DNA from: Octopus bimaculoides
Taxonomy: Eukaryota
DNA length: 34,259 bases
Reading direction: 5' to 3'
Assembly: GCF_001194135.2 (NCBI RefSeq)
Contig: NC_068989.1
Span: 73,034,904-73,069,162, forward strand
Below are positions 1,029-2,462 of this stretch, one piece after another. A model generated the notes under the pieces. It ran no database searches. It saw only the letters and a program-made list of their open reading frames with translations, and was not told the DNA's origin. The position numbers were made by a program, and so were the translations under genes. The first letter of the stretch is position 1. Every line of letters begins with the position of its first letter.

Positions 1029-1076
1029 ATTACTGAGAATAGTGAAGACAGCAATCTGGCGGAATCGTTAGCACGC

Positions 1077-2310
1077 TTTCGGTGTTATTCAAGGTGTACG
1101 TGAGTCATCTTTGATGGTATTTTCACAGTGTTAACATCGCTTATTTTGTTTCGGTGTTTTGAAACACTTCGATTAATTGTTTTTGTGCTGCTTTGCAGCA
1201 ATCTGTTTGTGCTTCCCCTCCTCGTAGGGGAGGGTCGGCTTAGTGAAAAAGATGTCTGAAAAAGACTTCAGTTTTTCAGATATGTCGTCTTCAGAGGAAG
1301 AATTTTTGAAAACTGTCAAGAGAATGGACGAAAAATTAAATGAAGGAAAGAGAAACTTTGCGGACGTGGCAACAAAAACGCAAGTGTTATAGGGAAGGGA
1401 CAGATATTGGACATGATTATTCAAGGTTCAACCGAAACCTTAGAAAACATTACAGAAACAATAATTATGGATGATGTGATAATGAAGGTCAGGGTGGAAG
1501 GCAGAATTCTTCGATGCTTTAAATGTGGCCTGAAGGGCCACATCAGAACGGACTGCCCGTCACCGACCAAAAAGACGGAGGGAATATAAAAGGAAGGGCC
1601 CCAGAAAGAGCAAGAAAATGAAGAGGAAAAAATATCAACAGAAGTAGAGAAGAAAGACACAGACAACGAATGGGAAACAATAGGAAAAAGGAAGAAGAGA
1701 AAAAGAAAAAGAATTAAGCCCCACAACCACCCAACACCTACCCACACCCTTTTCGACCCACTCTCCTCCTACAGACACCAAACCTGCCAATCTACCTCTG
1801 ACAGAAAAATGTACAAGCAGACAAGAACTCCCAAACTCATCCTCCCAGACAAAATAAATAAATAAATGACACGCTGTAATGTATGATGACTCAAATGAAA
1901 AACTGTGTAAAGAAGTGTTATCCTGAGAAGACTTTAAAACAGTTGGAACAACGAGTTTTGACAACATAAAGGGATAGCACTGTTGCGCGTTGTACTCGGG
2001 TGAGCAGAAACCAAAAATAACAAGATTTAAAAGAGGATATTATTGTTGGGAGGTGAAATTGGATTGGGACGTATTGCCACAGTATGCGTCATATGAGGAA
2101 GTGGTGGAAAAATTTGGAATCGATATTCTAGCGGGAACGAAGTTTAAAAGGTGTAAATGAAGCTGCTATGAAGTGGGGCAGAGTGGCTTCATTCCATTTT
2201 TCATATAATTTTTTCATACGTTGGTTCTAATTTTTTTCTCTGTTTGTATGTCCCACATGTTGTGTATTGTTCCCTCTATATTCGCCCCGTAGTGGGTAAT
2301 AAAAAGATTA
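1077..2310 (+). mobile_element. Non-autonomous Tx1/L1-like non-LTR retroelement (ORF1-only/HAL1-like or internally deleted) with 15-bp TSD
   Basis: Perfect TSD gaatcgttagcacgc at 1062-1076 and 2311-2325; ORF1-like CCHC knuckle; T-rich 3' UTR ending in stem-loop + AATAAA + A-rich end. No RT or endonuclease motifs seen. Clade assignment is inference. Confidence 0.82.
1252..2160 (+). pseudogene. Disrupted ORF1 (gag-like nucleic-acid-binding protein) of the non-LTR element
   Basis: ATG 1252 MSEKDF...KRNFADVATK; after a frameshift, KVRVEGRILRCFKCGLKGHIRTDCP (CX2CX4HX4C, 1515-1556); after another shift, EWETIGKRKKRKRK; last frame ...EVVEKFGIDILAGTKFKRCK* ends at 2160. Several stops and frameshifts. 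Confidence 0.75.
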
Positions 2311-2462
2311 GAATCGTTAGCACGCCGGGCAAAGCGCTTCGAGGTATTTCTTCTAATTTTACGTGCTGAGTTCAAATTACGCCGAGGTCGACTTTGCCTT
2401 TCATCCTTTCGGGGTTAATGAAAATATGTACAAGTTGAATACTGCGATCGAGGTAATCAATT

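What the first reader, a model, noticed from the sequence alone, without database searches (positions are those of the whole stretch)
1062..2325. Tx1/L1-like retroelement inserted at a precise site inside a SINE head: candidate SINE-targeting sequence-specific LINE
Seen: a 1234-bp element (1077-2310) with a gag-like CCHC ORF1 remnant is flanked by a perfect 15-bp TSD, gaatcgttagcacgc. That sequence is part of the conserved head of the most abundant SINE in the window, with empty sites at 6154-6168, 19731-19745 and 33600-33614. Established: Tx1-group L1-clade elements (Tx1, Keno, Dewa, Kibi, Koshi, Mutsu) often insert site-specifically into multicopy targets such as snRNA genes, tRNA arrays, 5S genes, microsatellites or other transposons. 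Inference: this family uses a high-copy tRNA-derived SINE as a safe harbour. A second, independent 3' junction at the same target position (15148/15149) supports this. I am not aware of a description of such a family in cephalopods, but cannot search to confirm.
Basis: partly seen in the sequence, partly recalled or inferred. Interest (0 to 1): 0.88.

Follow-up and report, generated by a model that had tools for sequence, protein, structure and literature searches.

The report
SINE-head-targeting ORF1-only octopus retroposon
A 1.2-kb octopus retroelement that encodes only a gag-like RNA-binding protein sits at one exact nucleotide position in the head of a common SINE, and two further copies in another octopus genome sit at the same position, so this family almost certainly integrates site-specifically into another mobile element.

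Summary
Window 1077-2310 is a 1234-bp insert flanked by a perfect 15-bp duplication (1062-1076 / 2311-2325) of a SINE-head sequence, and it carries a CCHC zinc knuckle.

Two relatives were recovered from a 25.5-kb Octopus vulgaris locus (L001). V2 is 85% identical and V1 about 55% identical. Both lie in SINE heads, and both have their 5' junction after the same GCACGC. V2 has a 15-bp duplication and V1 a 21-bp one.

The host SINEs are different variants, and each duplication repeats its own host's variant base. The insertions are therefore independent. No other copy or fragment of the family exists in the 59.8 kb examined, so 3 of 3 copies are at the site.

The site-specificity idea is well supported.
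- None of the three copies has room for an endonuclease/reverse-transcriptase ORF2. They are colinear, full-length, ORF1-only elements (HAL1-like) whose ORF evolved under purifying selection (dN/dS 0.30).
- The "Tx1/L1" assignment could not be tested.
- The "second junction" at 15148/15149 is the tail of a SINE subfamily whose last ~40 nt resemble the element's tail. Two other copies of that SINE are not in SINE heads.

This is a new variant of a known kind: target-specific non-LTR retrotransposition into another transposon.

The parts
1045..1076 (+). 5' part of the host SINE head, up to the insertion point
   Evidence: The 21-mer CTGGCGGAATCGTTAGCACGC at 1056-1076 matches the SINE-head consensus with 2 mismatches. 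The bases upstream are a decayed match to AAGGCGGTGAG.
1062..1076 (+). left copy of the 15-bp target-site duplication, GAATCGTTAGCACGC
1077..2310 (+). element W: a full-length ORF1-only non-LTR retroposon, decayed
   Evidence: Colinear end to end with L001 9836-11455 (V2, 84.6% identity) and L001 4914-6438 (V1, 55% identity). No ORF2.
1077..1251 (+). 5' UTR
   Evidence: The first 16 nt are extra relative to V1 and V2, and tttcggtgtt (1077-1086) repeats 1150-1159. The block AATTGTTTTTGTGCTGCTTTGCAG (1175-1198) is nearly invariant in all three copies.
1252..1371 (+). ORF N-terminus (MSEKDFSFSDMSSSEEEF...)
   Evidence: 88% identical to O. vulgaris protein P0001. A ~430-bp deletion relative to V2 follows at about 1372.
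1395..1586 (+). C-terminal half of the putative RNA-binding domain plus the CCHC zinc knuckle (1515-1556)
   Evidence: Pfam zf-CCHC. tblastn hits from about 100 octopod ORF1-family proteins.
1590..2157 (+). Lys/Glu-rich and C-terminal parts of the same ancestral ORF, now frameshifted and with stop codons
   Evidence: dN/dS between W and V2 is 0.29-0.43 in these segments, against 0.90 and 0.56 in the two wrong frames. P0057 aa 564-690 aligns here.
2161..2310 (+). 3' UTR with AATAAA (2298-2303) and an A-rich end ...AAAAAGATTA
   Evidence: The last ~40 nt before the AATAAA signal resemble the SINE-B tail (Smith-Waterman z=8.1).
2311..2325 (+). right copy of the 15-bp target-site duplication
2311..2460 (+). 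remainder of the host SINE (head continuation and core); its own tail is missing
   Evidence: 79.9% identical to positions 26-173 of a reference SINE copy. It ends against an antisense RT remnant.
15149..15337 (-). SINE-B: SINE core plus a tail related to the W/V2 3' end. Its 3' end abuts the next SINE at the same head position; its 5' part is lost in an N gap.
14949..15148 (-). SINE that starts exactly at GAAACGTTAGCACGC, the target half downstream of SINE-B
6148..6168 (+). unoccupied target site in a SINE head
19731..19751 (-). unoccupied target site, in the head of a SINE-B copy (19762-19558) whose own 5' flank is not a SINE head
33600..33620 (-). unoccupied target site (0 mismatches to the 21-mer consensus)
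13431..13451 (-). unoccupied target site. The SINE starts at CTGGCA and the upstream DNA is unrelated to the element family.
28868..28888 (+). unoccupied target site in a short-head SINE variant
29152..29172 (+). unoccupied target site (3 mismatches)

Best explanation
W belongs to an octopod lineage of short (1.2-1.6 kb) single-ORF non-LTR retroposons. They encode only an ORF1-type nucleic-acid-binding protein with one CCHC knuckle, in the way mammalian HAL1 encodes only L1 ORF1p. They integrate by target-primed reverse transcription at one fixed place in the head of the abundant octopus SINE.

Shown:
- Three independent full-length copies lie in the same orientation as the SINE.
- In all three the 5' junction is after GCACGC, which marks the top-strand break.
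- The 3' junction is either before GAA(A/T)CG (W and V2, 15-bp duplication) or 6 nt further 5', before CTGGCA (V1, 21-bp duplication).
- The ORF was under purifying selection while the copies diverged.

Inferred:
- An autonomous LINE with a sequence-specific AP-type endonuclease supplies nicking and reverse transcription in trans. A Tx1-group L1 is the most likely candidate, because that group is known for such targets and has recently active families in O. vulgaris.
- That LINE nicks the bottom strand at 5'-...ACG(T/A)TTC|(T/C)GCCAG-3' and primes on the A-rich 3' end.
- A SINE subfamily (SINE-B) carrying a related 3' tail uses the same or a related partner with looser targeting.
- Insertion separates the A-box region from the B box and so probably kills the host SINE copy while harming no gene.
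For: - Perfect 15-bp duplication and restored empty site.
- V2 junctions...CTGGCAGAAACGTCAGCACGC|TACTCAGTGT and ...AAAAAAAATTA|GAAACATTAGCAGGC.
- V1 junctions...CTGGCAGAATCGATACCACGC|cgttgagtg and ...aaagaaact|CTGGCAGAATCGTTAGCACGC.
- Independence: window and L001 share only repeats and no synteny. Position 4 of the duplication is T/T in W and V1 and A/A in V2, and both variants are common among unoccupied SINEs. V1's host is a short-head SINE with a different tail.
- Completeness: tblastn with 152 ORF1-family proteins, and nhmmer with the three copies, find only these three places in 59.8 kb.
- Chance: with about 14 recognisable sites in 55.5 kb of non-N sequence, a random oriented insertion hits that bond with probability of about 1.3e-4. 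For the two copies found without regard to their flanks, that gives about 1.6e-8 (my arithmetic).
- Architecture: the three copies are colinear and have no ORF2. dN/dS is 0.30 in frame against 0.90 and 0.56 out of frame.
- Tail sharing with SINE-B: z=8.1-9.5.
- Precedent: Tx1 LINEs and their SINEU partners target a Mariner transposon (PMC4494074). L1-Tx1 has 13 recently active families in O. vulgaris (PMC13282606). HAL1 encodes only ORF1p (PMC5753468).
Against: - Only three copies plus one SINE junction, from two loci. Two of the copies were ascertained through the element itself.
- No autonomous partner, endonuclease or RT was found, so trans-mobilisation and the clade are inference.
- SINE-B, which shares the tail, is outside SINE heads in at least one and probably two of three copies. 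The shared machinery is therefore not strictly site-specific, or it is not shared.
- The domain upstream of the knuckle has no Pfam or PDB sequence match, and the single-sequence AF2 model failed. 'RRM-type ORF1p' is therefore unproven.
- The SINE head gives no tRNA hit with ARAGORN or Rfam.
Confidence: 0.7

Rival explanations
1. Hot spot rather than true site specificity. The partner endonuclease has a short, loose cleavage preference that the SINE head happens to match. Because SINE heads are very numerous, they are often hit, but most family members genome-wide lie elsewhere.
For: SINE-B, with a related tail, is found in A-rich non-SINE DNA (L001 22755). A second SINE-B copy has a non-SINE 5' flank. 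The sample is only three ORF1-only copies.
Against: All 3 of 3 ORF1-only copies are at the site, and no copy or fragment lies elsewhere in 59.8 kb. The top-strand break is identical in all three, and the duplication is the same 15 bp in two of them. Loose endonucleases such as that of L1 give variable duplications (my knowledge).
Confidence: 0.15
2. One or two original insertions were copied together with their SINE flanks. This could happen by retrotransposition of the SINE-plus-insert composite or by gene conversion among SINE copies. Identical junctions would then not require a specific nuclease.
For: V2's host SINE with its insert is flanked by its own 9-bp repeat, TACTATTGT. That fits either order of events. 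The divergence between the W and V2 host SINEs is of the same order as between the elements.
Against: The duplication carries T at position 4 in both copies in W and A in both copies in V2. Descent from one composite would need parallel changes in both copies. V1 has a 21-bp duplication and a different host SINE variant. The insert has many T runs and separates the A and B boxes, so Pol III transcription of the composite is unlikely (inference). Even under this model, at least two or three independent hits at the site remain (V1, W/V2, SINE-B).
Confidence: 0.07
3. The junction at 15148/15149 is not an insertion of SINE-B into a SINE head. Instead, a 5'-truncated SINE-A landed next to the A-rich end of SINE-B, and microhomology (GAAA) set the truncation point.
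For: The SINE-B tail ends ...AAAGAAATAA and the SINE-A head has ...CAGAAACG. The 5' side that would show a duplication is lost in an N gap. Other SINE-B copies are not site-specific.
Against: The break is at exactly the bond used by W and V2. The 249-bp stretch of tail plus head aligns colinearly with the V2 3' junction at 82% identity.
Confidence: 0.3

Closest known systems
Tx1-group (L1-clade) target-specific LINEs: Tx1L in the Tx1D piggyBac element, Tx1-Mar in Mariner-N4_AMi, Tx1-9_AMi in Harbinger, Keno/Dewa/Mutsu in small-RNA genes (PMC4494074)
   Same: A non-LTR element inserted at a fixed position and orientation inside another multicopy element. A fixed target-site duplication. A SINE with a related tail shows weaker preference for the same target, like SINEU-1/2 compared with SINEU-3.
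   Different: The target is the head of a SINE, which I did not find described in the papers searched. The copies found here have no endonuclease/RT ORF2. Clade membership is untested.
HAL1 ('half-L1') of mammals (PMC5753468, citing Smit 1999 and Bao & Jurka 2010)
   Same: A non-autonomous element with 5' UTR, ORF1 only and 3' UTR that propagates as such. Here the ORF shows purifying selection across copies.
   Different: HAL1 ORF1p is the Transposase_22 type and HAL1 integrates like L1, without a specific site. Here the protein has a CCHC knuckle and integration is site-specific. Derivation from a known LINE is not shown.
R1/R2, TRAS/SART and other site-specific LINEs of rDNA and telomeres
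   Same: Precise nicks on both strands and constant junctions. A possible role for read-through RNA pairing with the target (inferred only).
   Different: Those are autonomous elements in host gene arrays or telomeric repeats, not in a dispersed SINE.
[quoted passage not shown]
   Same: The host repeat has a B-box-like GAGTTCAAATTCC and a MIR-like core (TTTCATCCTTTCGGGGTCGATAAATTAAGTACC), and it occurs with alternative 3' tails.
   Different: Identity with OR1 was not tested because no reference sequence was available. ARAGORN and Rfam see no tRNA in the head.

Membership tests
Tx1 group / L1 clade LINE | Encodes an ORF2 with an N-terminal AP-type endonuclease and a reverse transcriptase | tested here: not met
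   W (1234 bp), V2 (1620 bp) and V1 (1525 bp) are colinear and filled by one ORF1-type reading frame. No RT or endonuclease Pfam hit in the ten longer ORF1-family proteins scanned. These copies are at best non-autonomous derivatives.
Tx1 group / L1 clade LINE | RT domain groups with Tx1 in a phylogeny (the RTclass1 criterion) | not testable with these tools
   No RT of this family was obtainable. No cephalopod genome is searchable here: metagenome, viral and prokaryote collections gave 0 hits, and the protein search of the C-terminal region gave 0 hits.
Tx1 group / L1 clade LINE | Sequence-specific integration with constant junctions | tested here: met
   3 of 3 copies are in the SINE head, in the same orientation, with the 5' junction after GCACGC.
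Tx1 group / L1 clade LINE | Type I ORF1p (RRM plus CCHC knuckle). This is permissive and not exclusive to L1/Tx1 (PMC5203782). | tested here: inconclusive
   CCHC is confirmed. The upstream domain has no Pfam or PDB sequence match, and the AF2 model was unusable (pLDDT 39).
HAL1-like ORF1-only non-autonomous retroposon | Full-length copies contain ORF1 but no ORF2, and they propagate in that form | tested here: met
   Three independent insertions of the same architecture, from subfamilies only 55-57% identical to each other.
HAL1-like ORF1-only non-autonomous retroposon | ORF maintained by selection during amplification | tested here: met
   dN/dS is 0.30 (W-V2, 222 codons) and 0.21 (W-V1; dS is saturated), against 0.90 and 0.56 in the wrong frames.
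HAL1-like ORF1-only non-autonomous retroposon | Derived from, and shares termini with, an identifiable autonomous LINE | not testable with these tools
   No autonomous relative was retrieved.
SINE/LINE tail-sharing partnership (SINE-B with this family) | Significant similarity of the 3' tails | tested here: met
   The SINE-B tail against the W and V2 3' ends gives Smith-Waterman z=8.1 and 9.5, about 40 nt at about 80% identity. There is no similarity to the V1 tail (z=0.8).
SINE/LINE tail-sharing partnership (SINE-B with this family) | Shared target preference | tested here: inconclusive
   One of three SINE-B copies is at the site. One lies in non-SINE DNA. One has a non-SINE 5' flank and its 3' end is lost in a gap.
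tRNA-derived SINE (host) | Head recognisable as a tRNA | tested here: not met
   ARAGORN finds 0 genes in the window. Rfam finds no hit at E<=1 on a full copy. Only a B-box-like motif is visible by eye. The class name rests on the literature (PMC8967140).

The most novel reading that the evidence does not exclude
Target choice is not made by a dedicated endonuclease. The ORF1-only elements would be parasites of an ordinary, loosely targeting LINE, the one that also moves SINE-B to A-rich sites. They would reach the SINE head through their own product (the CCHC ORF1 protein binding the SINE head) or through pairing of read-through 3' RNA (GAAAC...) with the nicked SINE head. That would be a non-autonomous retroposon that brings its own address.
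Probability: 0.15. Interest if true: 0.8.

Novelty: new variant of a known kind. Interest (0 to 1): 0.55.

Why it matters
Site-specific non-LTR retrotransposons are the natural models for programmable, nick-primed gene insertion. They also show how selfish elements find harmless landing sites. Known targets are rDNA, small-RNA genes, telomeres, microsatellites and a few DNA or LTR transposons.

A lineage that lands at one bond in the promoter region of a dispersed, very abundant SINE would add a new type of target. It does so as an ORF1-only element kept under selection across subfamilies as divergent as 55% identity. It would also be a new way for one retroelement to inactivate copies of another, and a case where targeting and catalysis may be separated between helper and passenger.

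In practice, it predicts a class of nested SINE/insert structures that can confuse repeat libraries and short-read assemblies of octopus genomes. Both SINE-B copies in the window abut assembly gaps.

Tried and rejected
- Other copies in the window: blastn of the element against the window found none.
- Protein searches: three searches gave only three octopus proteins, P0001-P0003. The C-terminal ORF region gave nothing.
- Contig look-ups: P0002, P0003 and a window ORF are not on record. Only one extra locus, L001, could be fetched.
- Representative search with P0002: 258 relatives. The ten checked by name are all octopod. The ten longer ones scanned have no RT or endonuclease domain; the long hits are gene-model fusions with SNF2 or Helitron/PIF1.
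- Public collections: scans of metagenome, viral and prokaryotic contigs for SINE motifs gave 0 hits, so no genome-wide flank table was possible.
- Structure: the single-sequence AlphaFold model of P0002 had pLDDT 39 and was not used for fold search. A profile of 32 family members against PDB and Pfam found only zinc-knuckle hits.
- A conserved 3' hairpin: only a 3-bp stem with one compensatory change, too weak to claim.
- The SINE starting at CTGGCA at 13451 as a further 21-bp-type junction: rejected, because the upstream DNA is unrelated (z about 0).
- tRNA identity of the SINE head: no support from ARAGORN or Rfam.
- Orthology of W and V2: rejected, because nothing outside the repeats aligns.
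- The antisense RT remnant at 2464-2931 as part of the element: rejected, because it is on the opposite strand and beyond the host SINE.

Full report
**1. The observation**

The sequence GAATCGTTAGCACGC occurs without mismatch at 1062-1076 and 2311-2325. Allowing two mismatches, there are 8 matches in the window against 0.02 expected from shuffles. The other matches are heads of a SINE present in at least a dozen copies. Removing 1077-2325 and joining the flanks gives a normal SINE head running into the SINE core.

The insert is 1234 bp. It has a 175-bp leader and a broken reading frame that begins MSEKDFSFSDMSSSEEEF. The frame contains RCFKCGLKGHIRTDCP at 1515-1556, which matches Pfam zf-CCHC at E=1.1e-4, above the curated cut-off. 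The insert ends with AATAAA at 2298-2303 and an A-rich end...AAAAAGATTA.

**2. More copies, from another species**

A protein search with the ORF remnant found one protein, P0001, an Octopus vulgaris 'hypothetical protein'. Its locus, L001, is OX597825.1:36255560-36281110, 25.5 kb. It contains two relatives.

- V2 (L001 9836-11455) is 84.6% identical to W. It has about 430 bp of ORF that W has lost.
- V1 (L001 4914-6438) is only 55-57% identical to W and V2, but it is colinear from the first to the last bases.

Both lie in SINE heads, in the SINE's orientation.

- V2 junctions...GGCGGTGAGCTGGCA GAAACGTCAGCACGC | TACTCAGTGT... and ...AAAAAAAATTA | GAAACATTAGCAGGC CGGGTG.... This is a 15-bp duplication with 12 of 15 bases still identical.
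- V1 junctions...GAG CTGGCAGAATCGATACCACGC | cgttgagtg... and ...aaagaaact | CTGGCAGAATCGTTAGCACGC gaagaattt.... This is a 21-bp duplication with 19 of 21 identical.

The 5' junction, which marks the top-strand break, is after the same GCACGC in all three copies. The 3' junction, which marks the bottom-strand nick, is at the same bond in W and V2 and 6 nt further 5' in V1.

**3. Are these independent events?**

- Nothing outside the repeats aligns between the window and L001, so W and V2 are not orthologous.
- The host SINEs differ. W's host has a long head and lacks its tail. V2's host is close to the common consensus, with the tail ...GGGCCTTGTGCCTAGAATAGAAAAGAATA. V1's host is a short-head variant with the tail ...ATTGCTGGCTATGTGCCAAAATTTGAAA.
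- The fourth base of the duplicated sequence is polymorphic among unoccupied SINEs, with both GAATCG and GAAACG common. Each insertion has the same variant in both copies of its duplication: T/T in W and V1, A/A in V2. That is what duplication of each host's own sequence predicts. Descent from one composite would require parallel changes in both copies.
- The 21-bp and 15-bp duplications cannot derive from each other.

I conclude that there were at least three independent integrations.

**4. Is the sample complete?**

tblastn with 152 proteins of the ORF1 family hits only these three places in window plus L001. nhmmer with the three copies, singly and as a profile, also finds only these three, with no truncated fragments elsewhere.

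There are about 14 recognisable target sites in 55.5 kb of non-N sequence. A random insertion reaches that bond in that orientation with probability of about 1.3e-4. V1 and V2 were found without regard to their flanks, so the joint chance for them is about 1.6e-8 (my arithmetic).

**5. What the element is**

None of the copies has room for an endonuclease/RT ORF2. The long ORF1-family proteins checked in the databases are gene-model fusions, not ORF1-ORF2 elements.

The three copies share one architecture: leader, one ORF of roughly 350-390 codons when intact, and a 3' UTR of about 150 nt. P0002, 386 aa from O. bimaculoides, shows an intact ORF.

Between W and V2 the ORF has dN/dS = 0.30 over 222 codons, against 0.90 and 0.56 in the two wrong frames. 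This includes the part downstream of the knuckle that is now out of frame in W.

The ORF1-only form is therefore what propagates, and its protein mattered for propagation. That is the HAL1 situation in mammals (PMC5753468).

The family has 258 representatives at E<=1e-3. The ten I looked up are all from octopods: O. bimaculoides, O. sinensis, O. vulgaris and Argonauta hians.

Apart from the knuckle, no domain is recognisable by sequence, and a single-sequence structure prediction failed. 'RRM-type (Type I) ORF1p' remains a reasonable guess from the pattern of hydrophobic residues, not a result.

**6. The 'second junction'**

On the minus strand, 15337-15149 is SINE core (...cactggggtcaatgtaatcaacttaat) followed by ccctttgtctgtccttgtttgtcccctctatgtttagccccttgtgggcaataaagaaataa. 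Then, at 15148, GAAACGTTAGCACGC begins the rest of another SINE. The upstream partner is a SINE subfamily, which I call SINE-B.

- Its tail is significantly similar to the 3' ends of W and V2 (Smith-Waterman z=8.1 and 9.5, about 40 nt at about 80% identity). It is not similar to the V1 tail.
- Its 3' junction is at exactly the W/V2 bond. Its 5' side is lost in an N gap, so no duplication can be checked.
- Two other SINE-B copies exist. Window 19762-19558 has a 5' flank that is not a SINE head and a 3' end lost in a gap. L001 22997-22755 lies in A-rich non-SINE DNA.

SINE-B therefore has at most a weak preference for the site. This matches the published pattern for the crocodilian Tx1-Mar LINEs and their SINEU partners, where one SINEU family is almost exclusive to the target transposon and two are only weakly so (PMC4494074). 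It also leaves room for other explanations (see the rivals and the novel reading).

**7. Mechanism proposed**

Shown:
- orientation-specific integration;
- fixed staggered breaks 15 or 21 bp apart in the SINE head;
- full-length copies with a few untemplated or template-jump bases at the 5' junction (W has 16 extra nt, of which tttcggtgtt repeats 1150-1159);
- an A-rich 3' end.

Inferred:
- target-primed reverse transcription by an autonomous partner with a sequence-specific AP-type endonuclease;
- a bottom-strand nick at 5'-...ACG(T/A)TTC|(T/C)GCCAG-3' for the W/V2 lineage and a top-strand break at GCACGC|CGGGCG;
- recognition of the 3' tail by the partner RT;
- loss of Pol III promoter function in the host SINE, because the insert separates the A-box region from the B-box-like GAGTTCAAATTCC.

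A Tx1-group partner is the most likely candidate for two reasons. That group is known for fixed-site insertion into other transposons and small-RNA genes (PMC4494074). L1-Tx1 also has 13 recently active families in O. vulgaris (PMC13282606). Type I ORF1 proteins are not exclusive to L1/Tx1 (PMC5203782), so I put the Tx1 assignment at roughly even odds.

**8. Comparison with what is known, and novelty**

Target-specific non-LTR elements that use another transposon as their landing site are known: Tx1L/Tx1D, Tx1-Mar/Mariner-N4_AMi, Tx1-9_AMi/Harbinger and Tx1-8_Crp/LTR elements (PMC4494074). ORF1-only derivatives are known in mammals (HAL1).

In the literature searches I did not find a retroelement that targets a SINE head, a site-specific ORF1-only lineage, or any statement about target specificity of cephalopod LINEs. 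The searches cover only the open-access library, and Repbase and Dfam could not be consulted.

I rate this a new variant of a known kind. Interest is moderate: the principle is established, while the target, the host group and the ORF1-only form are new.

**9. Limits**

All inference rests on 59.8 kb from two loci. No cephalopod genome could be searched, and only one related locus could be fetched. It is straightforward to run on the public chromosome-level assemblies.

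Noticed in passing
window 860-1060; L001 3369-3345 (-): Head-to-tail SINE pairs. A SINE with a '...GTGCCAAAATTTGAA...' tail ends about 10-20 nt before the 5' end of the next SINE, in the window just upstream of W's host SINE and again in L001. 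This could be a dimeric SINE unit, or a preference of that SINE type for the 5' edge of other SINEs.
   Followed up: no
window 2464-2931 (-): An antisense reverse-transcriptase remnant of 156 aa with a weak RVT_1 hit (E=1.1e-3, below the gathering score). It directly abuts the point where W's host SINE breaks off at 2460. The host SINE's own tail is missing.
   Followed up: partly
window 1175-1198; L001 4967-4990 and 9920-9943 (approximate): The 24-nt block AATTGTTTTTGTGCTGCTTTGCAG in the 5' UTR is almost invariant among W, V2 and V1, although the elements are only 55-57% identical overall. It may be a promoter or an RNA signal.
   Followed up: no
window 1077-1086 and 1150-1159: An exact 10-nt repeat, tttcggtgtt. 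The first copy lies within 16 extra nucleotides at W's 5' junction that V1 and V2 lack. It looks like a template jump at the end of reverse transcription.
   Followed up: no
window 15338-16000 and 19300-19557: Both SINE-B copies in the window run into assembly gaps (runs of N). Nested or tandem SINE structures may be a cause of gaps in this assembly.
   Followed up: no
protein P0057 (database representative, 1135 aa): A gene model that fuses a Helitron N-terminal domain, a segment of this ORF1 family (aa 474-703, including the part downstream of the knuckle) and a PIF1 helicase. It is either an insertion of such an element into a Helitron or a capture.
   Followed up: no
L001 10001-15551: The O. 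vulgaris gene model for P0001 joins the first 50 codons of the V2 ORF to an exon 5.4 kb downstream. This is an annotation artefact built on a decayed repeat.
   Followed up: partly
window 16009-16179, 31431-31583; L001 14137-14309, 17029-17177, 22220-22377: Another short interspersed repeat of about 150-170 bp at 72-83% identity, shared by both loci and unrelated to the SINE studied here.
   Followed up: no
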